Shown piece after piece: positions 10,543 to 40,622 of a DNA stretch of 64,000 bases. The stretch lies in IMG/VR virus record IMGVR_UViG_3300044712_001937, positions 1 through 64,000 of that record. One strand, given 5' to 3'. Both the position numbers and the translations under genes were made by a program. Numbering within the stretch: position 1 is the stretch's first letter; each line of letters starts with the position of its first letter. The notes beneath the pieces were generated by a model that saw only the letters and a list, made by a program, of their open reading frames with translations, did no database searches and was not told the DNA's origin.

Positions 10543-10555
10543 CTTAAATTTTTCG

Positions 10556-16531: not shown

Positions 16532-16550
16532 AAAACATATTTTTTGATAT

Positions 16551-22631: not shown

Positions 22632-23267
22632 TCATTTTGCCAAAAGAACGATTATATATCTTTTAAGATTAATATAATTTGGAAGTGTTTTATAATATGA
22701 TTGATAGATATCACCATTTAAATCATTAAACGAAGTAGTAGTTCTTTCAGAAATTCTTAAAAGAATTTCATCTATATTAAACTTAAAATATCTATATAAA
22801 ACTAAATTAATGCCAACTATTTTATTACCATTTAAAATATATAAAATATCGTTTTTTAAATTATAGCTGGCATCAATTTTTTTAGGTAAAACATACATTA
22901 ATTCATCTAAATCTTTAATTTGAAAAAATATTGGGTCTAAATCGATATATGTATATTTTGGTGAAAAATAGTAATTAGGAATTAAATTAATAAAATCTTC
23001 AACTCCATTAATATGACAAGCTTTATGTTCATCAAAGCTATATTCCCAATATAATTCATTAGATATTATACAATTATTAAGAATATTTGCATTTTGGATT
23101 AATAAATTTTCAGGATTACATGATTTCATAAAAATCCAGCCAACATATAATGTAGGTAAGCTTTTATCAAGCTTATCATATTCAATAACTTCATTATAAT
23201 AATTAATATAATCAACTTTAGTGTGATTAACTAACTCTTTTTCATAGATAATATTGGCTATTTTCAT
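22632..23267 (-). CDS. Hypothetical protein
   Basis: 211 aa ORF. Confidence 0.55.
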   Translation of the reverse strand: MKIANIIYEKELVNHTKVDYINYYNEVIEYDKLDKSLPTLYVGWIFMKSCNPENLLIQNANILNNCIISNELYWEYSFDEHKACHINGVEDFINLIPNYYFSPKYTYIDLDPIFFQIKDLDELMYVLPKKIDASYNLKNDILYILNGNKIVGINLVLYRYFKFNIDEILLRISERTTTSFNDLNGDIYQSYYKTLPNYINLKRYIIVLLAK

Positions 23268-23290: not shown

Positions 23291-24532
23291 TTACTTAATA
23301 TTTTTCGGATTATAAACTATTTTATATAAATTATATAAACACATAAAATCTAACCCATTAAAACTTTCAAGTTTATTATTATCAAATTTACTATATTCAG
23401 GATTATAAAGATATGAATCAACTGACCATATATAATGAATCGGTGTATTGTCAAATTTCCATAATGAACCATCTTTAGGTATTGAAGATAATATTCTTTC
23501 TAATTTTTCCTTATTAAATTCTTCAATATTAGAATCATGTAATATTTTATGTATTAAAACAAAATGAGGATACCAATCTTTACGTTCAAAATCTTTAATT
23601 AAATGTTTGATATATTTTTTATTCCACCAAATATCACCGATACAACCTAATGAACGATATGAATATTCTTTTAAAGGTAATTTCCAAATATTTCTGGTCA
23701 TATTATATAAAAATTCAGCACCAAAAACACCAATTTTATAAAGAGGTTTATTCCACCAATGTAACATTTTACGATATTTATTATCATATTCAGTAATTAA
23801 ATCACCTGCTTTTGCAAATCCATATGCAAATAATCTTATATCAGCACCTCTTGGAACTTTTTTACCAGTAACAGGATTTTTAATTACTTGATTACAAGTT
23901 TTTAAAGAATATTTTAAAAATCTATCAATAATATTATGCATCATAGCAAGAATTTCCTCATCATTAATTAGTTTATTAATAACAGAAAATCCTAAAAATA
24001 AATGCCAAAACTGGTCTTGAGACATGACATTTCTTTCTATAGCACGATTTAATCCATTAATATCATTATAAGAATCTTTGTCATCAATTAAATATGTAAT
24101 AGGTCTATTAATTGTAACTTTTCCATTAAAAGTTTCAGGTTCTAATTGATTCTTACAATATTCGTAAAAAATCGAACCTCTTAAATCATCACGCATAAAA
24201 AACCCATTTAAATATAAAGGTTGTTTGCTATCAAATTCTCTTTTAGATAATAAATCTAATCTATTTAATGATAATAAAGCATTTTTTAATTGTTTTAATG
24301 TTTCCGGATTTTTATTTAAATAATAATCTGTAGATAAAAATATTAAATAATAACTAATTTCAATAGTTGTATCACCATAATTAATTCCTTCACCACCCCA
24401 AACATAACGTCCACTTGCAGGTAAATTAGTTCCTCTTATTGTAACATCATCGCTTAATGTAATAAAATGTTTAAAAAATCTTTCTTTATATGAAAGATAA
24501 GCCTGTTCTAATTCTGGTAAATTTATAGTCAT
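23291..24532 (-). CDS. Hypothetical protein, possibly an alpha-helical enzyme
   Basis: 413 aa ORF; GFFMRDD and MSQDQ motifs; function not recognised. Confidence 0.5.
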   Translation of the reverse strand: MTINLPELEQAYLSYKERFFKHFITLSDDVTIRGTNLPASGRYVWGGEGINYGDTTIEISYYLIFLSTDYYLNKNPETLKQLKNALLSLNRLDLLSKREFDSKQPLYLNGFFMRDDLRGSIFYEYCKNQLEPETFNGKVTINRPITYLIDDKDSYNDINGLNRAIERNVMSQDQFWHLFLGFSVINKLINDEEILAMMHNIIDRFLKYSLKTCNQVIKNPVTGKKVPRGADIRLFAYGFAKAGDLITEYDNKYRKMLHWWNKPLYKIGVFGAEFLYNMTRNIWKLPLKEYSYRSLGCIGDIWWNKKYIKHLIKDFERKDWYPHFVLIHKILHDSNIEEFNKEKLERILSSIPKDGSLWKFDNTPIHYIWSVDSYLYNPEYSKFDNNKLESFNGLDFMCLYNLYKIVYNPKNIK

Positions 24533-24560: not shown

Positions 24561-25244
24561 TTAATATATTCTTTGAATAGGTGTAAATATTTTTTCTTTT
24601 CTCTTTACATTATGTGATGAATAATCTTTAAATTCATTTTGTGCATAATAATCAACTGAATATTCTTGAGAATAATCAGTAATTTTAATATTATTTTCAA
24701 TAAAATAAAATGAAAATGCTATTTGAAAATTACGATTATTATGCACTAAATCAGGATGTTTTTTTGCATAATTATCAAACCAATTATTATATTTCACATT
24801 TTTTATTAAATCTTTAATTGTATTATATGATATCAAGCCATTTGAAATTACTGCATGTGAACCACCTTTTGAACACAGATAACTTCCTTCTTCATATAAT
24901 TCAATTAATTTTAAATCAAAATCATCTATATTTGGAATATAATCATCTTCTATAAAAATATAGTAATCAAAATTACCATAAGTTAGTTCAACAGCTTTTA
25001 ACCATTGACCATAAGATTGATATTTATTCTCACAATCAATTATCTTAACTTTATCATTTAATTCAATATTATAATAAGTATTAACATTATTATTATGTGG
25101 TTTCATTATTGTTATCTGGTCAATACTATTTTTAATTTTATTTAAATGATTTAAATGATTTTTCAACACATTTAAATAATATGCAGCATTATCAGGTTTC
25201 ACTCTAATACCATTCCAACTTGCAATAACATAATTAATTTTCAT
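24561..25244 (-). CDS. GT-A-like glycosyltransferase
   Basis: YIFIEDDY DxD-type motif; close paralog of 32839..33543. Confidence 0.55.
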   Translation of the reverse strand: MKINYVIASWNGIRVKPDNAAYYLNVLKNHLNHLNKIKNSIDQITIMKPHNNNVNTYYNIELNDKVKIIDCENKYQSYGQWLKAVELTYGNFDYYIFIEDDYIPNIDDFDLKLIELYEEGSYLCSKGGSHAVISNGLISYNTIKDLIKNVKYNNWFDNYAKKHPDLVHNNRNFQIAFSFYFIENNIKITDYSQEYSVDYYAQNEFKDYSSHNVKRKEKIFTPIQRIY

Positions 25245-25926
25245 TATTCTTACTTACTCTATAGATTGAATGTAATATATTAGCATCAAATGTATCAATT
25301 AAATCAATATTTACATTTAATTTAGTCTTCAATTTTTCTACTTGCTGTGTTGTGTTGAAGGTTACTTTATAATTATCAAAAAAATCATAAGCATTTCCAT
25401 TGGATAATTTATATTCGTTACCATGAATCATCGAAAATACCACATAACCACCTCTTTTAACAATAGGCATAATTTTTATTAAAATTTCTTCAGTTGCTTC
25501 AATTGTAGTATGAGTAAACACACTTAATAATAACACAACATCAGAAGTTTCAATCGCTTTTTTTTCTAATTCACTATCAGTAAATCCTAATTCAATTCTA
25601 TCATCATTTCCAAATAATTCGATAGCTTTATTTATGCAAGATTCGGTATATGTACTTTTAGATTTTTCAATTCCAATGTAATGGAAATTTTTTAATCGTT
25701 TACTTAAAAAATTACTTACTCTGGCTGACCCACAACCTAAATCCATTATCTTCATACCTTCTTTATATTTTTCACCCATTGCATTTATAAACGATGCAAT
25801 ACATAGAGAAGCTCTTGGCTCATCATCAGTACCTACGATAATACCTTTTTTTTCATAATTTTCAACAATAGGCGTATATTTTTCAATTCGCCATTTATTT
25901 AACCACAATTCATCATTAAAATTCAT
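25234..25926 (-). CDS. Class I SAM-dependent methyltransferase
   Basis: IMDLGCGSAR motif I; LSVFTH. Confidence 0.8.
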   Translation of the reverse strand: MNFNDELWLNKWRIEKYTPIVENYEKKGIIVGTDDEPRASLCIASFINAMGEKYKEGMKIMDLGCGSARVSNFLSKRLKNFHYIGIEKSKSTYTESCINKAIELFGNDDRIELGFTDSELEKKAIETSDVVLLLSVFTHTTIEATEEILIKIMPIVKRGGYVVFSMIHGNEYKLSNGNAYDFFDNYKVTFNTTQQVEKLKTKLNVNIDLIDTFDANILHSIYRVSKNNEN

Positions 25927-25937
25927 AATATTGTTAT

Positions 25938-26750
25938 TTATTTTTTAATTATTTTTTTTACCAACTCTAAATATTCATCTAAATCAAAATTATCCATACA
26001 TCTATTAGGACATTCACACACTGGAATATGTAATAAACACCTTCCATGACATTTAACTTTACTTTCTACATAATGAGTGTTAATATACTTATTATTTGAA
26101 CTTCCATTATTTCTAAAAAATATGACTTGAGGAATATTTAACGCTGCAGCACAATGAAACAATCCATTATCAATGCCAATAAATAAATCGCACGAATTTA
26201 AAATAGATAATGCTTCTCTAAGTGTAGTTTTATTTATAAATGACATATCAAATTCATTTTGATATTCTTCACCCATTCCAATACCTATTAATTTACAACC
26301 TTCTTCTTTCAATTTTTTAAAAAAAGGTGAAATATATCCATATCTTAAATTTTTACTATCATAGTAAGTTTCAGTGGATATTGCAATCTTTATTGACCCA
26401 TCAAAATCACTTAATAAATTTTTGCCAAATTTAATTTCATCCGAAGTAAGGTATATTTTTGGTAAAGTTTCTTTAGATAATTCAATATTCAATTGTTCAC
26501 CATAAAATTGAATAATATTACATTCAGTACATCTACATGGTGATATATTTATATTTGGATACGGAATTACCAAAATATTCTTTACATGAGGATTATTATA
26601 AAATAACTCAGGTACTGCAGTACAAACTGTGATATTATTATCTTCACTAAGTTTTTCAATAATAGGTGTTAAACCCAATGTATCTCCTATGGATGAACAT
26701 AATCTATCAGGAGATGAAAACGCAATACCTATAGAAACCTCTTTTTTCAT
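25938..26750 (-). CDS. GT9 (heptosyltransferase-like) glycosyltransferase
   Basis: SIGDTL, LREALSIL, DLFIGIDNGLFHCAAAL. Confidence 0.8.
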   Translation of the reverse strand: MKKEVSIGIAFSSPDRLCSSIGDTLGLTPIIEKLSEDNNITVCTAVPELFYNNPHVKNILVIPYPNINISPCRCTECNIIQFYGEQLNIELSKETLPKIYLTSDEIKFGKNLLSDFDGSIKIAISTETYYDSKNLRYGYISPFFKKLKEEGCKLIGIGMGEEYQNEFDMSFINKTTLREALSILNSCDLFIGIDNGLFHCAAALNIPQVIFFRNNGSSNNKYINTHYVESKVKCHGRCLLHIPVCECPNRCMDNFDLDEYLELVKKIIKK

Positions 26751-26753
26751 ACA

Positions 26754-27980
26754 TCAAATATTGAAATATAATACTCTATTATCTAAAAATTTGAAAGGAA
26801 TATCGTTTTGAATTAAATATTCATATGACCTAAAATGTTTTACATGCATTACGTCATCTAATAAAATGTGTTTATTTTTTAAAAATTCTTTATTTAATTT
26901 CATTACTTCTAAAAATTCTAAATATCCAACACCACCAGCAGAATCTAAAAAAATAATTTGTTTTTTATCATTATTAATTAAATCAAATAATATATTTTCC
27001 AATCCATTTACAAGATTTAATTCTTTATCATAAAAATTAATAGGGTCATTATGGTCTGTGAGAATTTGACATTCATTTAAATATTCTTTATTAGTTAAAA
27101 ACGAATCTTTTTTAATAAAATCAATCATATTCTCCCTATTTAAACTAAGTGCATTAATAACTTCAACATTTTTATATTGAGCTAAATTTACTTTAGCTGT
27201 ATTATAATTATCAATGTTACACTCAATAGTTTTTACAGGTAAGTTTGTTTCAGCAAAAGTTTTAGTTGAGCCAACACCAGTAAAAGTACCAGTTTCAATA
27301 ATTTCCTCAATATTATTATTTTTAATGATATTATTAATTAAATTAATGAAAGTTTGATTACTTGGATTACTGTTATAATATGTTATTTTTCTTGGAATTA
27401 CCATCACGCAACCGCTAACTTCATAATTCTTAATTATATTATGTGTTTTATAAAAATTTTTATAAATAAAATTAATATTATCGTGACCTAAATTTTCTCT
27501 TTCATTCCAATTTCCAGCACCATAATTTCCATCTTCATAAATTCTTAAATCATCACATATAATAATATCATTTTTAACGTTTTTTAACTTACAAATTAAA
27601 TCAATCTCATCTTCCAATGGAATTCTAATTTTTTTATCCTTTTCATATGATAATGGTAGACCTAATTCTGAACCCGGAAAATGTGCATCTAACCAAAATA
27701 CTGTTGGTATGTCTTTAATTGAAGGTAATAAATTAGTTAAAAAATCTGTGCTGCTTTGATTATTTAAATGTAAATTTTTTAGATGTCCAACATTTTTTAC
27801 AGCAATATTATACTGTTCTTTATTAATTTCACATGAATAATAATTTTCAAATTCAAATCTCATATAATCTAAAAATTGTAATCCATGTGCAGTACCAGTT
27901 TCTACAAAATTTTTAATTCCAAATTCATTTTTTAATTTAAAACCATCAATATAATCATAAAATTTTCCCATAATTACCAA
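26754..27980 (-). CDS. Tandem two-domain methyltransferase-like protein (ATG at 27971 is the likelier start)
   Basis: FVETGT...FWLDAH...CDDLR, then IIETGT...FLDSAG...LDDV. Confidence 0.6.
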   Translation of the reverse strand: MVIMGKFYDYIDGFKLKNEFGIKNFVETGTAHGLQFLDYMRFEFENYYSCEINKEQYNIAVKNVGHLKNLHLNNQSSTDFLTNLLPSIKDIPTVFWLDAHFPGSELGLPLSYEKDKKIRIPLEDEIDLICKLKNVKNDIIICDDLRIYEDGNYGAGNWNERENLGHDNINFIYKNFYKTHNIIKNYEVSGCVMVIPRKITYYNSNPSNQTFINLINNIIKNNNIEEIIETGTFTGVGSTKTFAETNLPVKTIECNIDNYNTAKVNLAQYKNVEVINALSLNRENMIDFIKKDSFLTNKEYLNECQILTDHNDPINFYDKELNLVNGLENILFDLINNDKKQIIFLDSAGGVGYLEFLEVMKLNKEFLKNKHILLDDVMHVKHFRSYEYLIQNDIPFKFLDNRVLYFNI

Positions 27981-29152
27981 CCTTTTTTAATACAATCTAC
28001 AATATATTCTCTATCTTCAGGTGTAACCCACCAACCAACAGGTATTGATATTAATTTTGGTGTTATACTATCTAAATTAGGTAATAACGTCTTAAAATCA
28101 TGAACACAGCTATGAATATCATTTCTTTCATGTACTTGACTAACCATGATACCACATTCTTTCATATAATCCATAAAATCTTGTTTTCTTTCAACAAGCA
28201 TAGAATAAATCCAAAAAGCAGAATCCATTCTTGAATCTCTATCTAATAGAGTAACACCTGCAACATTTTTAAGATTATCATCATAATATTTTGCATTTTC
28301 TTTATGTTTTTTTATCACATTTTCATTAACATCCTTTAAATTTTCAAGACCAATAACAGCATTAACATCATTCATATGAAATTTAAAACCCCATTCCGGA
28401 ATATCACATTCACATCTAAAATCCTTTTTATTAGTTTCTCTATTAATACCATACCATCTCAATAATTTTGCCCTTCTATATAAGTTTTCATATGGAAGAA
28501 CCAAAGCACCACCATCAACCGAAGTTAAATGTTTAATTGCTTGAAAACTAAATGTACAAATATTACCATGACTACCAATAGGTTGACCTTTAAAATTACT
28601 ACCAAACGAATGTGCACAATCTTCAATAACAGCAGGTTTAAAACCAAAAGTTCTAATTGCGTCAGTTTGAATCTGTGCTATTTTATCTAAATCATTTGGA
28701 TATCCACCCCAATGAACCAACATTATTGCTTTGGTTGTTGGACTTATTTTTCTTGCTAAGTCATCCAAATCCATATTTAATGTTTTTGGGTCAATGTCCA
28801 CCCATTTAATTTTCAAATTATTAGCTAAAATTGGAAAATTACTTGCAGTACAAGTTAATGGTGTTGCTAAAACTTCATCACCATCCTGAATACCTTTCCA
28901 ATTATGTAAATCAACACCTGCACCATATATTGATACATTACCAGTAAATGGTTTTTTTAATAAATGTAAAGCTAAATGTTCAGCAGATGTTGCTGAATTA
29001 GTAGTAACAACATAATCACTTTTAAATTTTTCTTTTAATTTTAATTCAAATTCATCAACTTTACTACCTTGTCCGATATATCCGGAATCTAATATTATGC
29101 CAGCAGCGTCTTTAGCTGTTTTAGACATATAAACTTTAAATAATTGTATCAT
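27974..29152 (-). CDS. DegT/DnrJ/EryC1/StrS PLP-dependent sugar aminotransferase
   Basis: NSATSA, VHWGG, IEDCAHSFG, SFQAIKHLTSVDGG (catalytic Lys). Confidence 0.92.
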   Translation of the reverse strand: MIQLFKVYMSKTAKDAAGIILDSGYIGQGSKVDEFELKLKEKFKSDYVVTTNSATSAEHLALHLLKKPFTGNVSIYGAGVDLHNWKGIQDGDEVLATPLTCTASNFPILANNLKIKWVDIDPKTLNMDLDDLARKISPTTKAIMLVHWGGYPNDLDKIAQIQTDAIRTFGFKPAVIEDCAHSFGSNFKGQPIGSHGNICTFSFQAIKHLTSVDGGALVLPYENLYRRAKLLRWYGINRETNKKDFRCECDIPEWGFKFHMNDVNAVIGLENLKDVNENVIKKHKENAKYYDDNLKNVAGVTLLDRDSRMDSAFWIYSMLVERKQDFMDYMKECGIMVSQVHERNDIHSCVHDFKTLLPNLDSITPKLISIPVGWWVTPEDREYIVDCIKKGW

Positions 29153-29154
29153 AG

Positions 29155-29895
29155 TTATTTTTTTATTTCATTACAGTAATTTATTATTTTCATAATCCTT
29201 TCACGATGATAAGGTGTTCTCCATTCTCTTGCAAACCATGTGTGATAAGCAAAATCAACACCTTTATGGTTTTTTACAACAGTGGTAAAATCATCATCAG
29301 GATAATCATAACCATTCAAATATTCAATTTTATAGTTATTTCTTAACAACCAGAAAAATAATTTATATGTAGGTTCAAAATTATCATATATAACACCATA
29401 TGGAAGATAACCCGGTGCTATTATCCTACTAAATTTTTCCTGATAAGGTCTATTTGTGTTAATTATATGATGTGGAATATATTTATCTAAATCATGGTCA
29501 TATTTCATTATATTAGCTTCAGCTAATGTATATTTTTTTCTCAATTCACCAACATTAATTATTGCAAAAAAAGCAATTATTGAAATTGGATTATGAAACC
29601 TATGACTAATAACACCACCATCAGGAACACCAGAACAATGAATATTATTCTCAATTTGATAATTTAATAAGTCAAGTAAAGCTTCTTTATCAGTAATAAT
29701 ACAATCTTCATCAATATATATTATCCAATCACAATCAAATCTTGGGTCAGTCATCATATAATTAAAAAATTGGAATCCATAAAAATGATTGCTACCATCA
29801 ACTCCAATCATTTCAAATCCAAAATCTTTATAAAATTCTTTAGTTTTAGAATATAATTCTTCACTCTGATAATTTGTAACTAATTTAATATTCAT
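29155..29895 (-). CDS. GT-A-like glycosyltransferase
   Basis: IYIDEDC DxD motif; island context. Confidence 0.55.
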   Translation of the reverse strand: MNIKLVTNYQSEELYSKTKEFYKDFGFEMIGVDGSNHFYGFQFFNYMMTDPRFDCDWIIYIDEDCIITDKEALLDLLNYQIENNIHCSGVPDGGVISHRFHNPISIIAFFAIINVGELRKKYTLAEANIMKYDHDLDKYIPHHIINTNRPYQEKFSRIIAPGYLPYGVIYDNFEPTYKLFFWLLRNNYKIEYLNGYDYPDDDFTTVVKNHKGVDFAYHTWFAREWRTPYHRERIMKIINYCNEIKK

Positions 29896-29896
29896 T

Positions 29897-30688
29897 TTAT
29901 ATTTTATTTAAATGATTATATCCAATTTCATTTATTTTATTAATAACCATATCAATCCTAAATGATTCATATTCTCTTAATAATTTAACATTATTCTCAT
30001 AATTCTCACTTGTTGTGTCAGTAATGGCATTCCCCTTATATATTGAATTATTTTCAACATAATTTCTACTATGATATAAGTGATATACTTTATAATTAGG
30101 TCTTAAAATATTATAAAAATGTTTTGCTTTACAAAAAAAAGCATTATCTTCTGCACCATAACCTATAAATCTTGGGTCATATCCACCAAGTTTATAATAA
30201 ATGTCCGATTTAATTAAAAACAATCCACCAACAGATTTTACTTGTCTAAAATTTAAATCTAATTGTGAAAAATTTAAAGTATTATCAAATATAGATTTAG
30301 TTTGATTTTCAGTTAAATCCATAACTGAACTTTCATACGGAATTATAATACTATTTTCCATTGTAGTTTTAAATGATTCAACATCTTTATTAATATCATT
30401 AAAAAATGCTTCATCAAGAATACAATCATTATCAGTAAACAAGATATAGTTTGAAGTAACTTCTTTAAAACCTGAATTTAATGCTAAAGCTCTACAAAAA
30501 TAATGAATTCCTGAATTTATTTTAAGATGAATAAGATTATCAAAATAATCAATATTAGTCTCACTATCCATTTCAGCAACTATTATTTTTGAATTAGGTA
30601 GTTGTTTTCTATAATGAGAAATTGCATATTTCAAATTATTTTCTCTATCTATCGTGCTATTTTTGTGAATTATAACTACATCAATCAT
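29897..30688 (-). CDS. GT2/GT7C-type glycosyltransferase
   Basis: FTDNDC and GGYDPRFIGYGAED. Confidence 0.8.
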   Translation of the reverse strand: MIDVVIIHKNSTIDRENNLKYAISHYRKQLPNSKIIVAEMDSETNIDYFDNLIHLKINSGIHYFCRALALNSGFKEVTSNYILFTDNDCILDEAFFNDINKDVESFKTTMENSIIIPYESSVMDLTENQTKSIFDNTLNFSQLDLNFRQVKSVGGLFLIKSDIYYKLGGYDPRFIGYGAEDNAFFCKAKHFYNILRPNYKVYHLYHSRNYVENNSIYKGNAITDTTSENYENNVKLLREYESFRIDMVINKINEIGYNHLNKI

Positions 30689-31433
30689 GTTTAATTAAAT
30701 GTTTAAATCCAATGTCATTTATGATTTTTTTGTTATCAATATCTAAATATTCTTTATAAAAATTAAAATTATCTGGATAATGAGGGTTTGAAGCTCCATC
30801 ATTAACACCTTTCGAATGATTCATATGAACTAAATCATAGTCAAGTCTAACCAAACCTAAAACATTTTTACCTTTCACAAAAAAAGCATCATCCTCTCCA
30901 CCCCACCCAATAAATCTTGGGTCATGTCCACCAATATTATAATAATTTTCTGAACTAATCATCACAATTCCACCATTAGATTGAAATGGTCTTTTAATTA
31001 AATCTAATGCGCCATAACTAAAATCTTTATGTTTCTTTATTAAATTAATTGTTTGATACTCATTTAAATTAATTACAGGACGATTATAAGGCAATATTAA
31101 ATGTTTATTCCAAATATCGATTAAACCATTTATGTTATACATAATATTTGGATGTAAAATACAATCATTATCATTAAAAATTAATAACTTATTTTTACTA
31201 ATATTATACCCTTCATTAAGCAATAATGATTTACAAAATAATGGTTCTTCAGTTTTTATTTTAAAATGAGTATTAACTAAATCATTTATTTCAGTAATAT
31301 CAGTTTCAGTATTCTGCTCGATAATAATTATATTTGCATTAGGTAGATATTCTTTATAATATTTCACAACAAAAAATAGATTTCTATTTCTATAATCATC
31401 AACAGCACAATGCGGTATTATTATATCAATCAT
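30681..31433 (-). CDS. GT2/GT7C-type glycosyltransferase (tandem paralog)
   Basis: FNDNDC and GGHDPRFIGWGGED. Confidence 0.8.
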   Translation of the reverse strand: MIDIIIPHCAVDDYRNRNLFFVVKYYKEYLPNANIIIIEQNTETDITEINDLVNTHFKIKTEEPLFCKSLLLNEGYNISKNKLLIFNDNDCILHPNIMYNINGLIDIWNKHLILPYNRPVINLNEYQTINLIKKHKDFSYGALDLIKRPFQSNGGIVMISSENYYNIGGHDPRFIGWGGEDDAFFVKGKNVLGLVRLDYDLVHMNHSKGVNDGASNPHYPDNFNFYKEYLDIDNKKIINDIGFKHLIKHD

Positions 31434-32341
31434 ACTTCATCATATTTATTCGTAATACATCTAATTTTAATTTCATTAATCATATATTCTTCAGGAATTT
31501 GATTAATAAGTTCTTGTCTTAATTCAATATTGTTTGTTGTAATTTGTTCACTATGAACTCTTCTATAAAAGAGAAAATTATCAATAGTATATATTTTTAC
31601 AAAATTTTTCAATCTTTCAATAAATTCAAAATCTGCAGCAGTTTTCCAAGGTAAATAACCACCTGATATTTCAAAAACATTTTTTTTGAAATATATAGCA
31701 CCATTAGCAGCATTGGGTCTTAATCCACCTTTAATTTTTTTTAAAGAATCAATATAATCAATATATTTAAATTTGATAATATCATAATTCTCTGAATACG
31801 ACATAATTTCATTAATTAAGTATGGTGTCATAATATCATCACTATCAAATCTAATTAAATTATCATATTTAGCTAATTTTAATAAAGTATTAGTTGTAAC
31901 ATAAGTTCCTTTATTATTTTTCATCATATAAACTTTCAAATTTCTATATTTATGACGAATTTCATTTACTTTAACTAAAGTATCATTACAACAATCAATA
32001 CCAATTAATATTTCATAATTATTATTATCATTAAAATATGTTTGTTTTTCAATTGAATTTAAACAATCTTCAATAAAATTTTGAGATTTATAGGCAGTTA
32101 TTATAATAGAAATTGGTTTTTTATCCTCTAAAATAGGTGAATATATAAATGAGTCTGTATGTTGACCTACTCTTTGTAATAATTGTGAATTGTTATATGA
32201 TGTTAATACACTACCAGAACATCTTATTTCACTACAAATTCTTATTTTATTTCTATCATTCACTTTATTTAAATTTTTATGATGATTTTTATATTCAATT
32301 TTTTTTACAATAAATTTTTTAACATTAATCTTCTTTTTCAT
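31430..32341 (-). CDS. GT2 glycosyltransferase
   Basis: SIIITAYK, RFDSDD, AADFEF. Confidence 0.85.
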   Translation of the reverse strand: MKKKINVKKFIVKKIEYKNHHKNLNKVNDRNKIRICSEIRCSGSVLTSYNNSQLLQRVGQHTDSFIYSPILEDKKPISIIITAYKSQNFIEDCLNSIEKQTYFNDNNNYEILIGIDCCNDTLVKVNEIRHKYRNLKVYMMKNNKGTYVTTNTLLKLAKYDNLIRFDSDDIMTPYLINEIMSYSENYDIIKFKYIDYIDSLKKIKGGLRPNAANGAIYFKKNVFEISGGYLPWKTAADFEFIERLKNFVKIYTIDNFLFYRRVHSEQITTNNIELRQELINQIPEEYMINEIKIRCITNKYDEV

Positions 32342-32359
32342 ATAATAATAAATACACTT

Positions 32360-32845
32360 TTACATTTTTTCATTTTCAAGTATAGACATAATTATCGAAT
32401 TTACCCACTGACCATTTTTTAAAACTTCATCCCTTTTAATTCCTTCGTATACAAAATTTAATTTTTGATATAAATTAATTGCTCGTTGATTTGTTTCTAA
32501 AACTTCTAACGAAATTTTATGTAAATTAAATTTTTCAAATAAAAAAGGAATAAATTTATTATAACTTTCATATGCAAGACCCAATCCCCTAAAATCTTTA
32601 TGTAAATCTGCACCAATATATATGTTTCTATTTTCAATAGAATAATTACTTGTTCTAAAATATCCTATACGATATTTTTCATCTAAAATAATTATCCAAA
32701 ACTTAGGATTTGTTTTATTATACCAATCAATAGTTTGGTCAAGAGTATATTTATTTGAATTATGTAAATATTCTTCACAACATTCATTTCTAATTTCATT
32801 TAAAAAAGGTAAATCTTCATATTTTAATTCATAAAATTCTAACAT
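32360..32845 (-). CDS. GNAT N-acetyltransferase (PseH/RimJ-like)
   Basis: FRGLGLA, LEVLETNQRAINLYQKLNFVYEG. Confidence 0.85.
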   Translation of the reverse strand: MLEFYELKYEDLPFLNEIRNECCEEYLHNSNKYTLDQTIDWYNKTNPKFWIIILDEKYRIGYFRTSNYSIENRNIYIGADLHKDFRGLGLAYESYNKFIPFLFEKFNLHKISLEVLETNQRAINLYQKLNFVYEGIKRDEVLKNGQWVNSIIMSILENEKM

Positions 32846-33543
32846 AAAATATTTTGAATTGGCGTAAAAATCTTTTCATTATTTTTTGCATTTGGTAACG
32901 AGTAATCCCATACTTTAGCATGTACGTAAAAATCGACCAAATATTGATTTCGATAATCAATTAATTTAATACCATTTTCAAATAAAAATCGTGAAAATGC
33001 AACTTGATAATTAGTGTGATGAAAAATAAAATATGGATTTAATTTAGCGTATTCATCAAACCAAACATTATATTTATGTTTTTCAAATAATTTTTTTATT
33101 GTATTTTTAGATATAATTCCATTAGAAACTTCACAATGAAAAACTGCATAATTTTCACTAATTTTTGAGCATAAATAACTACCCTCTTCATAAATTTCAA
33201 TCAATTTTTTATCAAAATTATGAGTTCCCGGAACATAATCATCTTCAATAAAGATAAAATAATCAAAATCGTCCAAAAATAATTCAATTGCTTTCATCCA
33301 TTGACCATAAGATTGATATTTATTCTCACAATCGATTATTTTTATTTTATCATTTAATTCAATATCATAATAAGTATTATGAATAGGATTAAACGGTTTC
33401 ATTATAGTTATTTGGTCAATATTATTTTTAATTTTATTTAACTCAAGAATATGTCTTTTTAAAACACTCTGATAATAATTAAAATCAGAATATCCATTAA
33501 TCCTTTGTCCACTCCAAGTTGCAATTATGTAATTTATTTTCAT
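32839..33543 (-). CDS. GT-A-like glycosyltransferase (paralog of 24561..25244)
   Basis: FIFIEDDY; near-identical blocks with 24561..25244. Confidence 0.55.
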   Translation of the reverse strand: MKINYIIATWSGQRINGYSDFNYYQSVLKRHILELNKIKNNIDQITIMKPFNPIHNTYYDIELNDKIKIIDCENKYQSYGQWMKAIELFLDDFDYFIFIEDDYVPGTHNFDKKLIEIYEEGSYLCSKISENYAVFHCEVSNGIISKNTIKKLFEKHKYNVWFDEYAKLNPYFIFHHTNYQVAFSRFLFENGIKLIDYRNQYLVDFYVHAKVWDYSLPNAKNNEKIFTPIQNILC

Positions 33544-34337
33544 TTAAAATTATTTAACTCAAATAATGGCTCGACTTTTTTTAATTTTAAAAAACCATAT
33601 TCATTCATTCCAGTTAAACTATCATCACTCCAATCATTATAATATTTAATCAATTTTTGAATATGTTCTTCATTATCATAATTTAGTCTTTTAGCAGCAT
33701 TTCTAATTTTACTTTCAATATTTTTTCTAACCAATGTCATATGATGCATTTGAATAAATTCTGGTTCAAATACTTTATAATAACCATAATCAGGTCTTCT
33801 TGTAGGGTCTACAAGCACTGGTGAATATTGATTTAATATAAAAGAGACTTTATTATTTTTTATTGGAAAAAATAAACTAACATGAGTATCATGAGGTTTA
33901 TCTATAATAAGTGAAGGTGATTTATAATAATCAATAAAATCTGCAAATCCTACAAAATTTGGATTATTTTTATACCAATCTATTAAATTACTAAATTGTC
34001 CTTCAGTATAAAATTCATCACAATCCATTGACATATGATGAGTACAATAATGTTTTCTCGATAATTCAATTCCAATATTTCTTTTATTTATTTGATTATA
34101 ATGAGGTATTGGATATTGTTTATTTTCATAATGAACTACATCATCCACAAGTCCATCAGCCTTTAAATCATTTAATAATTTAATTAAATTATCTGAACAT
34201 TTATTTCCCCAATATGATTCGCTTTGATATACTACTGAAATATAATCAACGAAATCTCTTATTTGTAATATTGAATCTTCGAGCAATTCTTCGCCATCAA
34301 ATATATTATAACTAACACCAAATTTAATGAAACCCAT
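33540..34337 (-). CDS. GT-A-like glycosyltransferase
   Basis: MSMDCDEFY DxD motif; island context. Confidence 0.55.
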   Translation of the reverse strand: MGFIKFGVSYNIFDGEELLEDSILQIRDFVDYISVVYQSESYWGNKCSDNLIKLLNDLKADGLVDDVVHYENKQYPIPHYNQINKRNIGIELSRKHYCTHHMSMDCDEFYTEGQFSNLIDWYKNNPNFVGFADFIDYYKSPSLIIDKPHDTHVSLFFPIKNNKVSFILNQYSPVLVDPTRRPDYGYYKVFEPEFIQMHHMTLVRKNIESKIRNAAKRLNYDNEEHIQKLIKYYNDWSDDSLTGMNEYGFLKLKKVEPLFELNNFK

Positions 34338-34340
34338 AAA

Positions 34341-35846
34341 CTATTTAATTAATCTAATAAACTTATTTAATTTTTCTTTATTTTTTAAATAAAATGGATG
34401 TAATCTTTCAAAATAATCCTTATTTAATTTGACTATTTTATCTTCACTTTTATTTCTCGATAATGACTCGTAATGAAAAGCAACTGCATCACTTACTGTA
34501 ATATTTTTTTTATTAAGTAATAAACATTCCATGTTTAATTCAACATCTTCAAAACATTCAATATAATTTTCATTAAAACATCCAATTTCATTAAATAATG
34601 TTTTATTAATCAATAAAAATGCTCCAGTATTACCTAAAGAATTATAATTTATATTTTTAGAATAATTATCAGATTTTCCAATATCTGCATGAGATAAATG
34701 AATATTTTCAGTATTATCTCTCACAATTGTTATTCCATTATGTTGAATTGATGCATCAGCATAGTGTAGTCTAATTCCAATAGTACCAGCAAGACTACCA
34801 TAATTATTATAAACATTAACACATCTACTTAATACATCATTTAATAATTTCACATCATCATTACAAAATAATATGAGTTCAGAATCTGGTGATATATGGT
34901 TTTTAACCATATCATTATTAATTTTACCAAAATTGTAATAATCATATTTAACTAATTTAACCTTTTCACTTAAAATTTGGTCATATTGTTTAATAGTTTC
35001 TTCATTACTTCCGGTATCTGCAATCAATATCTCATAATTTTCATAATTAACAACATCATTCCAAGAATTAATATTATTAATTAATATATTTGCATGATTT
35101 TTTGTTGGAATTATAACACTAACCTTTGGCTGGGGTTTTACATTGATAAAATCTTCATCAAATTGTGGATATACTGTTAATGGTAAATCATTTTTATATT
35201 TTAAAACAAATTGTGCTCTATTATTTTCCCATTCTTGATTTGTCATTCCAATCGACTTATGTAATATCCTAATTGCAGTAGTTACACCAATATTGCAACC
35301 ATCAAGATAATTTGGAGTACAAAAACCTAAATCATAAAAATGAAAACCTTTAAAATCTTCATCAAATTTATGAATTATAGTATCCGGATTAAATGTCATA
35401 AATAACCCATCTATCAATACAACATCTTTTGTATTCGGAATTTCTTCTGAATATTTACTAACCCAAGTACTATAACTGTCAGTATGTTCAACAATACCAC
35501 ACATTTTAGATGTATTATCCCACCATCTTCCTGAATTTGGTAGATAAGTCGAGCCAGCAACACCTATTATATCAAAATAAGTATTATTATATTTAGTTAA
35601 TAACAATCTACCCCAATTTTTTGTTTTTATAACTATATCATTATGACAAACAACAAAAATACAATCTTTTTCAATATGGTTTAAAATCGCATTATTATAT
35701 ATTTCAGACAATGAATACTGATTAAAATTAGGATAACAAATTGTTTTATGTTTAACACCAATAGTTTCATCAATATGTTTTATAAAACTATCGTTATCTT
35801 CTTTAGATAAATGAGAGGAAAATACTACTACTATATTATTTTTCAT
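34341..35846 (-). CDS. Two-domain glycosyltransferase (GT2-like + GT2)
   Basis: VCHNDI...IDGLF...FHFYD domain, then VSVIIPTK...FCNDDV...FEDVEL domain. Confidence 0.8.
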   Translation of the reverse strand: MKNNIVVVFSSHLSKEDNDSFIKHIDETIGVKHKTICYPNFNQYSLSEIYNNAILNHIEKDCIFVVCHNDIVIKTKNWGRLLLTKYNNTYFDIIGVAGSTYLPNSGRWWDNTSKMCGIVEHTDSYSTWVSKYSEEIPNTKDVVLIDGLFMTFNPDTIIHKFDEDFKGFHFYDLGFCTPNYLDGCNIGVTTAIRILHKSIGMTNQEWENNRAQFVLKYKNDLPLTVYPQFDEDFINVKPQPKVSVIIPTKNHANILINNINSWNDVVNYENYEILIADTGSNEETIKQYDQILSEKVKLVKYDYYNFGKINNDMVKNHISPDSELILFCNDDVKLLNDVLSRCVNVYNNYGSLAGTIGIRLHYADASIQHNGITIVRDNTENIHLSHADIGKSDNYSKNINYNSLGNTGAFLLINKTLFNEIGCFNENYIECFEDVELNMECLLLNKKNITVSDAVAFHYESLSRNKSEDKIVKLNKDYFERLHPFYLKNKEKLNKFIRLIK

Positions 35847-35866: not shown

Positions 35867-35897
35867 CAAACATAATAAAATTTAATCTAATTGTCAA
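35867..35897 (-). promoter_or_regulatory. Bacteroidota-type promoter upstream of the glycosylation island
   Basis: TTG (35897-35895), 20-nt spacer, TATGTTTG (35874-35867). Confidence 0.55.
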
Positions 35898-36214
35898 GCA
35901 TTATTATTTTTAAAAGTAGTTAAAATTGACTCATAATCAGACTTAACTTTTGCAAGTGGAAATGGTATTCTAATCAAAGTTCCATCTGGAATATCAAATT
36001 CATTTAGATATTGTGGATTAGCATATAAAATCAAAAAATCAAAAAATGGATTACCATAATATTTTTGTGATAATTTATCTAATCTACTAAAATTAACATT
36101 CCAATTTTCAAATTTATCACCAACATTTTTAGGTAAATCTACAAATGGCATTATTTCAGTAGTACCATCGTCTTTTTTTAATATTGAATATCTATTATAA
36201 TCTGCTGTTGGCAT
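35894..36214 (-). CDS. LysM/gp53-like baseplate protein
   Basis: RLDKLSQKYYGNP...ILYANP...IPDGTLIRIP. Confidence 0.7.
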   Translation of the reverse strand: MPTADYNRYSILKKDDGTTEIMPFVDLPKNVGDKFENWNVNFSRLDKLSQKYYGNPFFDFLILYANPQYLNEFDIPDGTLIRIPFPLAKVKSDYESILTTFKNNNA

Positions 36215-39917: not shown

Positions 39918-40622
39918 ATGATTAATAAAAAAATTTGTAGTAAATGTAAAATTGAAAAATATTTAGATGATTTTTATAAACAAAAAGATGGATATCTTGG
40001 AAGAAGAGCTGATTGTAAAGAATGTTCCAAAACAAAAATTAAAGAATGGCATAATAAAAATCCTAAATATTGTGAAAATTATTTATTGTTACATCCTGAA
40101 AAAAGAAAAATATATTCTAAAAAATATTATAATAATAATAAATATAAATGTTTAAAATATAGAAAAGAATATTATACAAATAATACACTTAAATTAAATA
40201 ATTATTCTAAAAATTATTATAAATTAAATAAAAATAATTGTTTATTACAAAGTAAAATATGGAGAAATAATAATCGTGATAAATGTAGAGAATATGCAAA
40301 AAATAGATATAATAAAAGTATTGAATTAGCAGCAATTAAATGGATGAGAAACTTTTTATATAGAACAGAAAAACAAGGTTTTAAATTAAATAAAATAAAT
40401 GTTGTTTTAGAATTTGGATATTCTCCAAAACAATTAATTCAAAGAATTGAATGCCAATTCAAAGATGGAATGTCATGGGAAAATAGAAATAAATGGCATA
40501 TTGACCATAAAAAACCTATATCTAAATTTAGTATAAATACTTCAATGAAAACTATTAATATGTTAAGTAATTTACAACCAATTTGGAAAACTGATAATTT
40601 ATCAAAAGGTAATAAATTTTAG
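39918..40622 (+). mobile_element. HNH-type homing endonuclease, antisense to the tail operon
   Basis: N-terminal CSKC/CKEC; WHIDHKKP...NLQPIW..DNLSKGNK. Confidence 0.75.

What the first reader, a model, noticed from the sequence alone, without database searches (positions are those of the whole stretch)
24561..35846. ~11 kb phage-encoded glycan-building island (about 9 glycosyltransferase-like genes, 2 methyltransferase-like, an aminotransferase and an acetyltransferase)
Seen: 13 contiguous co-oriented genes resembling an LPS/capsule locus, but with no flippase, polymerase or nucleotide-sugar dehydratase in the window. It sits between putative head genes and the baseplate genes. Established: phage GTs modify DNA, virion proteins or host surface glycans. 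Inference: a virion (capsid/tail) glycosylation pathway, or host-surface remodelling for superinfection exclusion; the sheer number of GTs argues against simple DNA glucosylation.
Basis: partly seen in the sequence, partly recalled or inferred. Interest (0 to 1): 0.6.

Follow-up and report, generated by a model that had tools for sequence, protein, structure and literature searches.

The report
Hypervariable glycan-building cassette in jumbo phage
A 365-kb T4-like jumbo phage from rhizosphere metagenomes carries, next to its baseplate genes, a tightly packed block of sugar-adding and sugar-tailoring enzymes; related phages carry different enzymes at the same site behind one shared "anchor" enzyme, much as bacterial O-antigen loci differ between serotypes, but what the sugar chain is attached to is still unproven.

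Summary
Window 24561-35846 (minus strand) is 13 back-to-back ORFs:
- Five glycosyltransferase (GT) genes by Pfam (six domains).
- Three more GTs by confident AlphaFold models with a GT-A fold (O1, O11, O12).
- One unverified GT candidate (O6).
- One clear SAM methyltransferase and one two-domain methyltransferase-like protein.
- A DegT aminotransferase and a GNAT acetyltransferase.

The window is the start of a complete 364,702-bp T4-like jumbo phage. It has a gp23-type capsid gene at 78.8-80.5 kb, 49 tRNAs and no integrase.

The new point is comparative. In about 25 related phage contigs the site between the gp25-like baseplate gene and a conserved gene (U2) always begins with the same Glyco_tranf_2_5 GT domain, but the rest differs. 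115 ORFs from 10 loci fall into 67 families; one is universal and 45 occur in a single locus. The other loci carry other GTs, O-methyltransferases, dehydratases and epimerases.

The genome has no lipid-carrier initiating transferase, flippase or polymerase, no nucleotide-sugar synthesis genes, and no route to hydroxylated DNA bases. All island proteins lack membrane segments.

Best reading (about 0.45): cytoplasmic glycosylation of a conserved phage, probably virion, protein using host nucleotide sugars. Host-surface remodelling remains possible. DNA glycosylation is disfavoured.

The parts
34341..35846 (-). O13, a two-domain glycosyltransferase and the first gene of the cassette. The N-terminal Glyco_tranf_2_5 domain (about nt 35196-35789) is the conserved 'anchor'. 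The C-terminal GT2 domain (about nt 34584-35120) is variable.
   Evidence: Pfam PF13712 at 4.6e-23 and PF00535 at 4e-8. The N-terminal 223 aa are 53-72% identical in about 25 related contigs, always just downstream of the gp25-like gene. It is the only family present in all 10 loci compared.
33540..34337 (-). O12, a GT-A fold glycosyltransferase with no Pfam family (DCD motif).
   Evidence: AF2 pLDDT 92.4. Foldseek PDB top hits are SunS/ThuS S-glycosyltransferases, TarP, TarS and SpsA, E about 1e-7, with 305 hits below 1e-3. 589 homologues, all unnamed.
32839..33543 (-). O11, a GT6-like (retaining type) GT-A glycosyltransferase with an EDD motif. It is functionally paired with O10.
   Evidence: AF2 pLDDT 93.5. 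Foldseek matches human GTA/GTB and Bacteroides BoGT6a at E about 2e-6. Viral library matches include cyanophage S-SCSM1 and giant-virus GTs. Natural O11-GNAT fusions exist, for example P0154.
32360..32845 (-). O10, a GNAT N-acetyltransferase (nearest curated model PseH, below cutoff).
   Evidence: Pfam Acetyltransf_3 and Acetyltransf_1 at E about 1e-13. TIGR03585 PseH at 52 bits against a cutoff of 93.
31430..32341 (-). O9, a GT2 glycosyltransferase.
   Evidence: PF00535 at 2.3e-14.
30681..31433 (-). O8, a GT2-like glycosyltransferase (Glyco_tranf_2_2 plus Glyco_transf_7C) and a paralogue of O7.
   Evidence: 36% identical to O7. 58-63% identical to genes in L104 and L107.
29897..30688 (-). O7, a GT2-like glycosyltransferase (Glyco_tranf_2_2 plus Glyco_transf_7C).
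29155..29895 (-). O6, a conserved viral protein of unknown family. It is a candidate GT-A (DED motif) but unverified.
   Evidence: No Pfam, NCBIfam or PDB match. hhalign matches only the DxD region of the O7/O8 family, E=0.008. Atlas neighbours are viral hypothetical proteins, and one cluster is 13% GT2. 74-77% identical orthologues sit in the L104 and L107 cassettes.
27974..29152 (-). O5, a PLP-dependent sugar aminotransferase (DegT/DnrJ/EryC1 family).
   Evidence: PF01041 at 5.5e-70. The nearest curated model is PseC, 200 bits against a cutoff of 423. 82% identical in relative L104. The closest cellular homologues are 53-59% identical; one, in Nonomuraea, lies beside a dTDP-4-dehydrorhamnose epimerase-family gene.
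26754..27980 (-). O4, with two class-I SAM-methyltransferase-like halves. Probably a sugar O-methyltransferase. Unique to this phage among the loci compared.
   Evidence: PDB 3ntv at E=1e-3 over residues 197-281. Glycine-rich motif I is present in both halves. Atlas neighbours are Methyltransf_24 and rhamnosyl-O-methyltransferase/CmcI clusters, scores 0.89-0.94. Pfam is silent. Singleton family.
25938..26750 (-). O3, a short GT-B-like protein with a GT9 (heptosyltransferase-type) nucleotide-sugar binding motif.
   Evidence: PF01075 at 6.2e-8, 32.7 bits. Heptosyltransferase I/II models are far below cutoff. PDB RfaF 1psw at E=0.025 and TibC at 0.89. Singleton family.
25234..25926 (-). O2, a class I SAM-dependent methyltransferase.
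   Evidence: Methyltransf_12, _31, _25 and _11. 75% identical in L104.
24561..25244 (-). O1, a paralogue of O11 (GT6-like GT-A).
   Evidence: 59% identical to O11 over the full length. Included in alignment A2, which was used for the model.
23291..24532 (-). Function unknown. Its cellular homologues are secreted Bacteroidota proteins.
   Evidence: No family or PDB hit. 457 relatives among 1.8 billion representatives. 13 of 41 aligned homologues carry a T9SS Por_Secre_tail domain and one carries CBM96. Absent at this site in relatives.
35894..36214 (-). D1, the gp25-like baseplate wedge subunit and the conserved upstream boundary of the cassette.
   Evidence: phrog_7145 at 4.2e-6. 55-74% identical in relatives and always adjacent.
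36220..39474 (-). D2, a 1084-aa conserved structural-module protein upstream of gp25. Calling it a baseplate protein is inferred from position only.
   Evidence: No family hit. More than 100 related viral contigs.
22632..23267 (-). U2, a conserved gene of unknown function that forms the downstream boundary of the variable interval.
   Evidence: 53-67% identical in 13 related loci at the far end of the interval.

Best explanation
The island is one allele of a hypervariable, phage-borne glycan-assembly cassette. It sits at a fixed site in the baseplate gene block of a lineage of T4-like jumbo phages.

Shown:
- The cassette has eight verified GT genes (plus one candidate), two methyltransferase genes, one sugar aminotransferase and one N-acetyltransferase.
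- All island proteins lack predicted membrane segments.
- The genes are packed as one co-oriented unit directly behind the gp25-like gene.
- Every related phage starts the interval with the same Glyco_tranf_2_5 GT domain and follows it with a different set of GTs and sugar-tailoring enzymes.
- The phage genome has no nucleotide-sugar synthesis genes, no lipid-carrier initiating transferase, no flippase, polymerase or ligase, and no integrase.

Inferred mechanism:
- Late in infection the enzymes draw on host nucleotide sugars in the cytoplasm.
- O5 aminates a host-made NDP-4-keto-6-deoxy sugar, and the product is N-acetylated by O10.
- The fused-elsewhere pair O11/O10 handles this sugar together.
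- The conserved anchor GT puts the first sugar on an acceptor common to the whole lineage.
- The variable GTs (GT2, GT6-like, GT9-like) extend the chain, and O2 and O4 cap it with methyl groups.

Most likely acceptor (inferred, not shown): a conserved phage structural protein. Each phage would then carry its own virion 'glycotype'.
For: - Enzyme identities.
- Compact co-oriented block behind gp25.
- Fixed site with variable content. The gp25-to-U2 interval is 4.8-13.7 kb in 13 loci. 115 ORFs from 10 loci form 67 families; only the anchor is universal and 45 are locus-specific.
- The intervals of relatives are also glycan genes. Among 72 ORFs there are 16 GT2, 7 anchors, 10 Methyltransf_24, 4 FkbM, 3 UDP-GlcNAc 2-epimerases, 3 GT-D, 2 GDP-mannose dehydratases, 2 TylF and a PglD-like enzyme.
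- The shared modules in L104 and L107 appear in a different order, with homing endonucleases among them.
- O11-O10 fusion proteins exist.
- No membrane segment in any island protein, and no ORF in the genome with more than 4 hydrophobic segments.
- No Bac_transf, Glycos_transf_4/WecA, NTP_transferase, Epimerase, NeuB or CTP_transf_3.
- No integrase.
- No route to hydroxylated DNA bases.
- Precedents for virus-encoded glycosylation of the virion. Mycobacteriophage capsid and tail-tube glycans are reported by Freeman et al. 2023 (as cited in PMC12619734). Clade-specific clusters of 6-33 genes for fibril glycans are described in Megavirinae (PMC10117803).
Against: - No acceptor is identified, and nothing here shows any glycan on a virion.
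- Many LPS and O-antigen GTs are also soluble or peripheral. They could extend a host lipid-linked intermediate and use the host's own flippase and ligase.
- The GT9-like O3 resembles LPS-core heptosyltransferases.
- Transcription timing is only inferred from gene order; the promoter and terminator scan was uninformative.
- O6 and U1 are unexplained, and O4 is supported only weakly.
- The Tet_JBP search had no working positive control.
- The genes on the far side of the island are of unknown function, so 'embedded in the structural module' is shown on one side only.
Confidence: 0.45

Rival explanations
1. Host-envelope remodelling. The soluble GTs extend or cap a host lipid-linked (undecaprenyl-phosphate or LPS-core) glycan, and the host's own flippase and ligase export it. 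This would change the cell surface during infection, for example to block superinfection, to stop progeny being lost on lysed-cell debris, or to alter recognition by grazers.
For: The overall gene content looks like an O-antigen or LPS locus: GT2s, a GT9-like gene, an aminotransferase, an acetyltransferase and methyltransferases. Peripheral GTs of such pathways also lack membrane segments. Comparable gene sets in cyanomyoviruses have been read as host-surface modification (PMC12801897). Homologues of U1 are secreted Bacteroidota proteins, which points to a host phylum with elaborate surface glycans.
Against: There is no initiating phosphoglycosyl transferase, flippase, polymerase or ligase in the 365-kb genome. 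There is no integrase, so classical lysogenic seroconversion is unlikely. A conserved anchor GT across phages that are only about 40-85% identical in core proteins fits a phage-conserved acceptor better than host glycans that differ between hosts. The cassette sits behind baseplate genes rather than among early or host-takeover genes.
Confidence: 0.25
2. DNA hypermodification. The GTs build oligosaccharides on modified bases of the phage genome to evade restriction and CRISPR systems.
For: Phage GT-A and GT-B enzymes related to LPS and teichoic-acid GTs can add mono- to tri-saccharides, including heptose, to 5hmC, and such clusters are sometimes near structural genes (bioRxiv 10.1101/2023.12.21.572611). 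Polyarabinosylated 5-hydroxycytosine exists in RB69 and DLP3 (PMC13326640).
Against: No acceptor-making enzyme was found. The single ThyA homologue keeps L143, C146, D169 and N177, and scores 277 bits against the thymidylate synthase model with a cutoff of 108. There is no C5-cytosine methyltransferase, and that search had a working control. There was no Tet/JBP hit, though its control was silent. Known DNA glycans are short, and 8-9 GTs plus amino-sugar and methyl tailoring exceed anything described.
Confidence: 0.08
3. Glycosylation of a non-virion target. This could be a phage or host cytoplasmic protein (for example to inactivate a defence or translation factor), or a soluble or secreted glycoconjugate.
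For: All enzymes are soluble. O12's nearest solved folds include peptide S-glycosyltransferases. Nothing ties the product to the virion directly.
Against: Single-target inactivation usually needs one GT, not a pathway of about 13 genes with tailoring enzymes. Hypervariability of the outer enzymes suggests an exposed, recognised structure.
Confidence: 0.12

Closest known systems
Mycobacteriophage virion glycosylation (Che8, Corndog, Myrna type; Freeman et al. 2023, known to me only through citation in PMC12619734)
   Same: Phage-encoded soluble GTs that use host nucleotide sugars to decorate phage structural proteins in the cytoplasm.
   Different: Those systems have only a few GT genes in siphoviruses of Actinobacteria, and their glycans were shown biochemically. 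Here there are 8-9 GTs plus amino-sugar and methyl tailoring in a T4-like jumbo phage. The cassette is hypervariable behind a conserved anchor GT, and there are no biochemical data.
Giant-virus glycosylation clusters (Megavirinae fibril glycans, chlorovirus capsid glycans; PMC10117803, PMC9614988)
   Same: These are virus-encoded clusters of 6-33 genes that combine sugar aminotransferases, N-acetyltransferases, methyltransferases and multiple GTs. Their content is clade-specific, and they work in the cytoplasm independently of host glycosylation machinery.
   Different: The hosts are eukaryotic, and the giant viruses encode their own nucleotide-sugar pathways. This phage encodes none, although relatives carry kinase, nucleotidyltransferase and dehydratase genes. 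The proteins are not closely related in sequence; O11 matches only at the fold level.
Bacterial O-antigen and capsule loci (Wzx/Wzy or ABC type)
   Same: Gene content and population-level pattern are alike. Conserved flanks bracket a serotype-like variable set of GTs and tailoring enzymes.
   Different: There is no initiating transferase, flippase, polymerase, chain-length regulator or ligase. The locus lies in a virus, between structural genes.
Phage DNA sugar-hypermodification gene clusters (T4 alpha/beta-gt; 5hmC, 5hoC and 5hmU glycans)
   Same: Phage GTs related to LPS and teichoic-acid enzymes that use host nucleotide sugars.
   Different: The enzymes that make the base acceptor are absent or canonical here. 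The pathway is far larger than any known DNA glycan needs.
LPS-like gene clusters of large cyanomyoviruses (P-SSM2, S-SCSM1, S-SCSM2R; PMC12801897)
   Same: These are T4-like phages with many GTs (up to 13) and epimerases. O11's best viral fold match is an S-SCSM1 GT.
   Different: Function is untested there too. No conserved-anchor, hypervariable-cassette architecture has been described for them, as far as the papers I read show.

Membership tests
Glycosyltransferase families (GT2, GT-A fold) | Match to GT2-type Pfam models above the gathering score, or a confident GT-A fold with a DxD-type motif. | tested here: met
   O7, O8, O9 and O13 by Pfam. O12 and O11 by AF2 plus Foldseek. O1 is a 59%-identical paralogue of O11. 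O6 is not met.
GT6 (retaining alpha-Gal/GalNAc transferases) | Sequence membership in the GT6 family and its catalytic residues, not just fold similarity. | tested here: inconclusive
   For O11 there is only fold-level similarity: TM about 0.45-0.55, 9-14% identity. There is no sequence-profile match. Treat it as GT6-like in fold, not as a member.
GT9 (LPS heptosyltransferases) | Full-length GT-B protein matching the heptosyltransferase models. | tested here: inconclusive
   O3 matches only the C-terminal roughly 50-residue nucleotide-sugar motif: PF01075 at 32.7 bits, above the cutoff of 22. The equivalog models score 20-29 bits against cutoffs of 135-569, and the protein is only 270 aa.
Pseudaminic acid pathway (PseB, C, H, G, I, F) | PseC and PseH above the curated cutoffs, plus a PseB dehydratase, a PseI (NeuB) synthase and a PseF CMP-transferase. 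| tested here: not met
   PseC scores 200 bits against a cutoff of 423, and PseH 52 against 93. No NeuB, Epimerase/dehydratase or CTP_transf_3 anywhere in the genome.
Wzx/Wzy- or ABC-type surface polysaccharide locus | An initiating phosphoglycosyl transferase (Bac_transf or WecA type). | tested here: not met
   No PF02397 or PF00953 match in the whole genome, with working controls.
Wzx/Wzy- or ABC-type surface polysaccharide locus | A multi-pass flippase, polymerase or ligase. | tested here: not met
   No ORF has more than 4 hydrophobic 19-mers by a crude Kyte-Doolittle scan. No island protein has any.
Phage DNA sugar hypermodification cluster | An enzyme that makes a hydroxylated base. This is either a ThyA homologue with N177D, L143D/E or D169N, or a C5-methyltransferase plus a TET/JBP dioxygenase. 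| tested here: not met
   ThyA is canonical at all four positions. No PF00145 match. No PF12851 match, but that control was silent.
Phage virion protein glycosylation system | Phage-encoded soluble GTs linked to structural genes. | tested here: met
   The cassette begins 47 nt downstream of the gp25-like gene, on the same strand. The proteins are soluble.
Phage virion protein glycosylation system | A glycan demonstrated on a virion protein, with the acceptor identified. | not testable with these tools
   There is no isolate and there are no proteomic data. No acceptor could be nominated from sequence.
Virus-encoded clade-specific glycosylation toolbox (Megavirinae type) | A cluster of sugar-tailoring enzymes plus GTs whose content differs between related viruses. 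| tested here: met
   The feature is as described in PMC10117803. This is a resemblance in organisation, not homology of the cluster.
T4-like (gp23-type capsid) myovirus | A gp23-family major capsid protein and T4-type baseplate proteins. | tested here: met
   PF07068 at 214 bits. PF12322 T4_baseplate and phrog_150, and phrog_7145 for gp25.

The most novel reading that the evidence does not exclude
These jumbo phages have 'serotypes' of their own. A conserved anchor GT primes a virion, possibly baseplate or tail, protein. An O-antigen-like swappable cassette then builds a lineage-specific methylated amino-sugar glycan on it. The cassette would be under diversifying selection and exchanged between phages with the help of homing endonucleases. 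In that reading the virion glycan is a recognition determinant, serving for host adsorption, shielding from host or predator recognition, or competition between phages. Glycan diversity would then be a hitherto unnoticed axis of phage host-range and evasion evolution.
Probability: 0.3. Interest if true: 0.78.

Novelty: new variant of a known kind. Interest (0 to 1): 0.55.

Why it matters
Protein glycosylation of tailed-phage virions has been shown only for a few small mycobacteriophages with one to four GT genes.

If this cassette decorates the virion, it would be by far the most elaborate phage glycosylation pathway known. It would also be the first with a serotype-like population structure: a conserved anchor enzyme at a fixed locus, followed by dozens of interchangeable enzyme families.

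That would give a concrete, testable handle on how large environmental phages vary their surfaces. It would also supply a set of uncharacterised soluble GT families. The O12 family has 589 relatives detected (E ≤ 0.001) and the O11/O1 and O6 families each have 60-76; none is in Pfam.

Even under the host-surface reading, a lytic jumbo phage carrying swappable glycan cassettes would be of interest for phage-host surface biology in soil and aquatic Bacteroidota-type hosts.

Tried and rejected
1. Pseudaminic or legionaminic acid pathway. It was suggested by PseC and PseH being the nearest curated models. I rejected it because both are below cutoff and NeuB, the dehydratase and the CMP-transferase are absent.

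2. DNA glycosylation. I looked for ThyA variants, a C5-methyltransferase and TET/JBP. ThyA is canonical and the others are absent.

3. Cultured relatives. Megablast of the island and tblastn of D2 against 50,697 GenBank phage records gave nothing. O13 gave only weak hits to its GT2 domain.

4. O6 as a GT. A profile search of PDB and hhalign against the O12, O11 and O7/O8 families gave only a DxD-region match. It stays unverified.

5. U1. There are no IMG/VR relatives by pattern scan. The large HMMER search found relatives but no named family. The contexts of the closest homologues are uninformative phage-like contigs.

6. Promoter and terminator scan. It was no better than shuffled sequence in this AT-rich DNA.

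7. Strain-level cassette replacement. One run held only 37% of the words, but laying its contigs on the island showed fragmentary identical contigs at low depth, not a variant.

8. Stop-codon recoding, prompted by a CTA-anticodon tRNA. Frame coverage barely changes when TAG or TGA is read through, so the standard code was kept throughout.

9. 'Head genes' next to the island. No support. The major capsid gene is about 43 kb away.

10. Membership in the published 'moraphage' lineage (PMC12619734). It could not be tested because those genomes are not among my sources.

11. Contexts of cellular homologues of the aminotransferase. They give only a weak hint of a dTDP-sugar substrate.

12. Tools. 

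Full report
WHAT THE WINDOW IS

The 64-kb window is the first part of a single 364,702-bp virus record with direct terminal repeats. CheckV rates it 100% complete. The last 127 bases repeat the first ones, GC is 26%, and there are 49 tRNA genes and a tmRNA. The major capsid protein is T4 gp23-like (PF07068, 214 bits) and lies at genome 78786-80468. T4-type baseplate proteins lie in the window: phrog_7145, a gp25-like wedge subunit, at 35894-36214; and phrog_150 / PF12322 at 43400-44344. There is no tyrosine integrase. So this is an uncultivated T4-like jumbo myovirus. It has no near relative among 50,697 GenBank phage records. Near-identical DNA occurs in three rhizosphere metagenomes.

THE OBSERVATION

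Thirteen ORFs on the minus strand fill 24561-35846. Gaps are 1-18 nt and overlaps 4-11 nt. Base composition is no different from the surroundings. I number the ORFs O13 (first transcribed, 34341-35846) down to O1 (24561-25244).

Pfam and NCBIfam give:
- O13: two GT domains (Glyco_tranf_2_5 and GT2).
- O9, O8, O7: GT2-type.
- O3: a GT9-like C-terminal motif only.
- O5: a DegT/DnrJ/EryC1 sugar aminotransferase (E=5.5e-70).
- O10: a GNAT acetyltransferase.
- O2: a class I SAM methyltransferase.

Five ORFs had no family.
- O1 and O11 are 59%-identical paralogues.
- O11 and O12 were modelled from alignments of homologues, with pLDDT 93.5 and 92.4.
- O12 matches GT-A enzymes: SunS/ThuS S-glycosyltransferases, TarP, TarS and SpsA.
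- O11 matches GT6-type retaining GT-A enzymes, namely human GTA/GTB and Bacteroides BoGT6a. It also matches viral GTs from cyanophage S-SCSM1, giant viruses and Tenacibaculum phage PTm5.
- O4 looks like two class-I methyltransferase halves. It matches PDB 3ntv at E=1e-3, it has motif I in both halves, and its atlas neighbours are Methyltransf_24 and rhamnosyl-O-methyltransferase/CmcI clusters. Pfam does not see it.
- O6 remains unverified. Only its DxD region aligns to the O7/O8 family.

The tally is eight verified GT genes (nine GT domains) plus one candidate, two methyltransferase genes, one aminotransferase and one acetyltransferase.

Those ORFs match nothing, the capsid gene is elsewhere, and the next recognisable genes are UvsX-like, exonuclease and DnaB-like.

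WHAT THE SURROUNDINGS AND RELATIVES ADD

Scanning IMG/VR with O13 and with the 1084-aa protein upstream of gp25 gave 98 loci. In about 25 of them the order is the same. The large protein comes first (about 40% identity), then gp25-like (55-74%), then the N-terminal Glyco_tranf_2_5 domain of O13 (53-72%). A conserved gene, U2 (window 22632-23267, 53-67%), lies further on.

What lies between the anchor domain and U2 is not conserved.
- The interval measures 4.8 to 13.7 kb in 13 loci. It is 12.6 kb here, because the unrelated 413-aa gene U1 (23291-24532) also lies inside it.
- I clustered all 115 ORFs of ten loci at 30% identity and 50% coverage. This gave 67 families. Only the anchor is present in all ten, and 45 occur in a single locus.
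- The other intervals are also glycan genes. Among 72 ORFs from seven relatives, Pfam finds 16 GT2, 7 anchors (one per locus), 10 Methyltransf_24, 4 FkbM methyltransferases, 3 UDP-GlcNAc 2-epimerases, 3 GT-D, 2 GDP-mannose 4,6-dehydratases, 2 TylF O-methyltransferases, GT4, a C-methyltransferase and a PglD-like acetyltransferase.
- The anchor itself is free-standing in some phages and fused to different second GT domains in others.

Two relatives share part of this phage's set. They are L104 (a 362,763-bp contig whose capsid protein is 85% identical) and L107. The shared genes are O8, O6, O5, O2, O1/O11 and O10, at 58-86% identity, but in a different order. L104 also has GIY-YIG and HNH endonuclease genes inside the cassette. 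Both relatives add a PfkB sugar kinase, and L104 also a cytidylyltransferase-like nucleotidyltransferase and an NDP-sugar epimerase/dehydratase. All three are missing from the present genome.

The O11-like gene directly precedes the GNAT gene in all three phages. The two are fused into one 397-aa protein in other metagenomic homologues. The GT and the acetyltransferase therefore work on the same sugar.

WHAT THE GENOME LACKS

With working positive controls, the whole genome has none of the following:
- NeuB, NAD-dependent epimerase/dehydratase, CMP-sugar synthetase or sugar-1-phosphate nucleotidyltransferase.
- Bac_transf or WecA/MraY-type initiating transferase.
- C5-cytosine methyltransferase.

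No island protein has a hydrophobic 19-mer typical of a membrane helix. No ORF in the genome has more than four, which excludes Wzx, Wzy or WaaL-like proteins.

The one thymidylate synthase homologue (70108-71271) scores 277 bits on the thymidylate synthase model. It keeps L143, C146, D169 and N177. Changes at L143, D169 and N177 mark 5hmC, 5hoC and 5hmU synthases, according to PMC13326640.

All three PF00535 (GT2) matches in the genome lie in the island. However, a GT4-type gene exists near 273.5 kb. A 462-aa ORF at 336598-337986 resembles phage phi92 gp164, which is annotated as a glycosyltransferase.

HOW IT MOST LIKELY WORKS

Shown: this is a set of soluble glycosyltransferases and sugar-tailoring enzymes. 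They are encoded as one compact unit behind a baseplate gene, depend on host nucleotide sugars, begin with a lineage-wide conserved GT, and are otherwise exchangeable.

Inferred:
- O5 aminates a host NDP-4-keto-6-deoxy sugar, and the product is N-acetylated by O10. Supporting hints: the nearest curated model is PseC, a Nonomuraea homologue lies beside a dTDP-sugar epimerase-family gene, and some relatives bring their own dehydratase.
- O11 transfers that sugar, or presents the acceptor for it.
- The anchor domain attaches the first residue to an acceptor that all these phages share.
- The other GTs extend the chain, and O2 and O4 methylate it.

A conserved first enzyme with variable later ones is what one expects when the acceptor is conserved, as a phage protein would be, and the outer glycan is under diversifying selection. 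Together with the absence of any lipid-carrier or export function and of lysogeny genes, this makes glycosylation of a phage, probably virion, protein the best-supported reading. I give it about 0.45.

RIVALS

- Host envelope glycans, extended on host lipid carriers: about 0.25. Peripheral GTs of LPS pathways look the same, and O3 resembles heptosyltransferases.
- DNA glycans: about 0.08. No acceptor base can be made by any known route.
- Another cytoplasmic or soluble target: about 0.12.

Nothing here demonstrates a glycan on anything.

COMPARISON WITH WHAT IS KNOWN

In logic this is closest to the virus-encoded, clade-specific glycosylation clusters of Megavirinae. Those have 6-33 genes with aminotransferases, acetyltransferases and GTs (PMC10117803). 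It is also close to mycobacteriophage virion glycosylation (Freeman et al. 2023, cited in PMC12619734; I could not read the paper itself).

At the population level it resembles bacterial O-antigen loci, but it fails their defining features: initiating transferase, flippase and polymerase. It fails the defining feature of DNA-hypermodification clusters, and it is not a pseudaminic acid pathway.

A recent description of aquatic jumbo 'moraphages' with Bacteroidota hosts notes four core GT orthogroups (PMC12619734). Whether this phage belongs to that lineage could not be tested.

A Bacteroidota host is hinted at only by U1, whose cellular homologues often carry the type IX secretion sorting domain.

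VERDICT

The added finding is that the island is one allele of a hypervariable, anchor-led cassette at a fixed site of a jumbo-phage lineage. To my knowledge that architecture is not described for phages, so I rate it a new variant of a known kind.

Interest is 0.55. The reading in which virions carry serotype-like glycans has a probability of about 0.3 and would deserve about 0.78 if true.

Noticed in passing
genome 148036-148110 (outside the window): ARAGORN calls a tRNA with anticodon CTA, which would read TAG ('Pyl'). TAG ends only 11 of 257 long ORFs. Reading TAG or TGA through barely raises frame coverage (0.84 against 0.86 and 0.87), so there is no sign of recoding. The role of this tRNA is unexplained.
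   Followed up: partly
genome about 104-144 kb (outside the window); window 10555-10627: There are 49 tRNA genes, many duplicated, and a tmRNA gene, mostly in one region. One tRNA-Met lies in the window.
   Followed up: no
window 23291-24532 (-): U1 is a 413-aa protein unique to this phage at this site. It has 457 relatives in the 1.8-billion-protein library. 13 of 41 aligned homologues carry a type IX secretion C-terminal sorting domain and one carries CBM96. It is therefore a domain of secreted Bacteroidota proteins, possibly acting on carbohydrates. The fold is unknown.
   Followed up: partly
genome 273535-274038 (-) and 336598-337986 (-): There are further GT-like genes outside the island. 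One is a 343-aa GT4-type (PF00534/PF13692) ORF. The other is a 462-aa ORF whose C-terminus is 38% identical to phage phi92 gp164, annotated as a glycosyltransferase. A homologue of the 462-aa ORF lies 2 kb upstream of an anchor-GT + DegT + GNAT cassette in the otherwise unrelated contig L015.
   Followed up: partly
L108 / L104 (GenBank JBAZIW010000001.1, 362,763 bp) and L109-L113: A whole relative of this phage is deposited as a contig of a 'Candidatus Paceibacterota' MAG. Shorter related contigs sit in MAGs labelled Pacearchaeota, Woesearchaeota, Methanobacteriota, Kuenenia and Sphingobacterium. These are probably binning errors, not host evidence.
   Followed up: partly
L104:6297-6845 and 15398-16534; window 39918-40622 (+): Homing-endonuclease-type genes (GIY-YIG, HNH) sit inside the cassette of a relative. 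A weak HNH-like ORF on the opposite strand interrupts the baseplate gene block in the window. Both are plausible drivers of the mosaicism.
   Followed up: no
genome 70108-71271 (+): The thymidylate synthase homologue is 388 aa against about 264-296 for the curated thymidylate synthase models. The HMM alignment is split into two or three stretches, which indicates large insertions, yet the catalytic residues are canonical.
   Followed up: partly
window 40627-43161 (-): An 844-aa protein with four hydrophobic segments lies between the baseplate hub and wedge genes, with no family match. By position it could be a tape-measure or hub-associated protein.
   Followed up: no
window 13493-14146 (-): A 217-aa ORF between the DnaB-like and exonuclease genes has a sub-threshold match to ADP-ribosyltransferase exoenzyme (PF03496, E=0.027, 14 bits). 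This is probably chance.
   Followed up: no
window 1-127 and genome end: The last 127 bases of the record repeat the first 127. This is the overlap by which the record is classed as having direct terminal repeats.
   Followed up: yes
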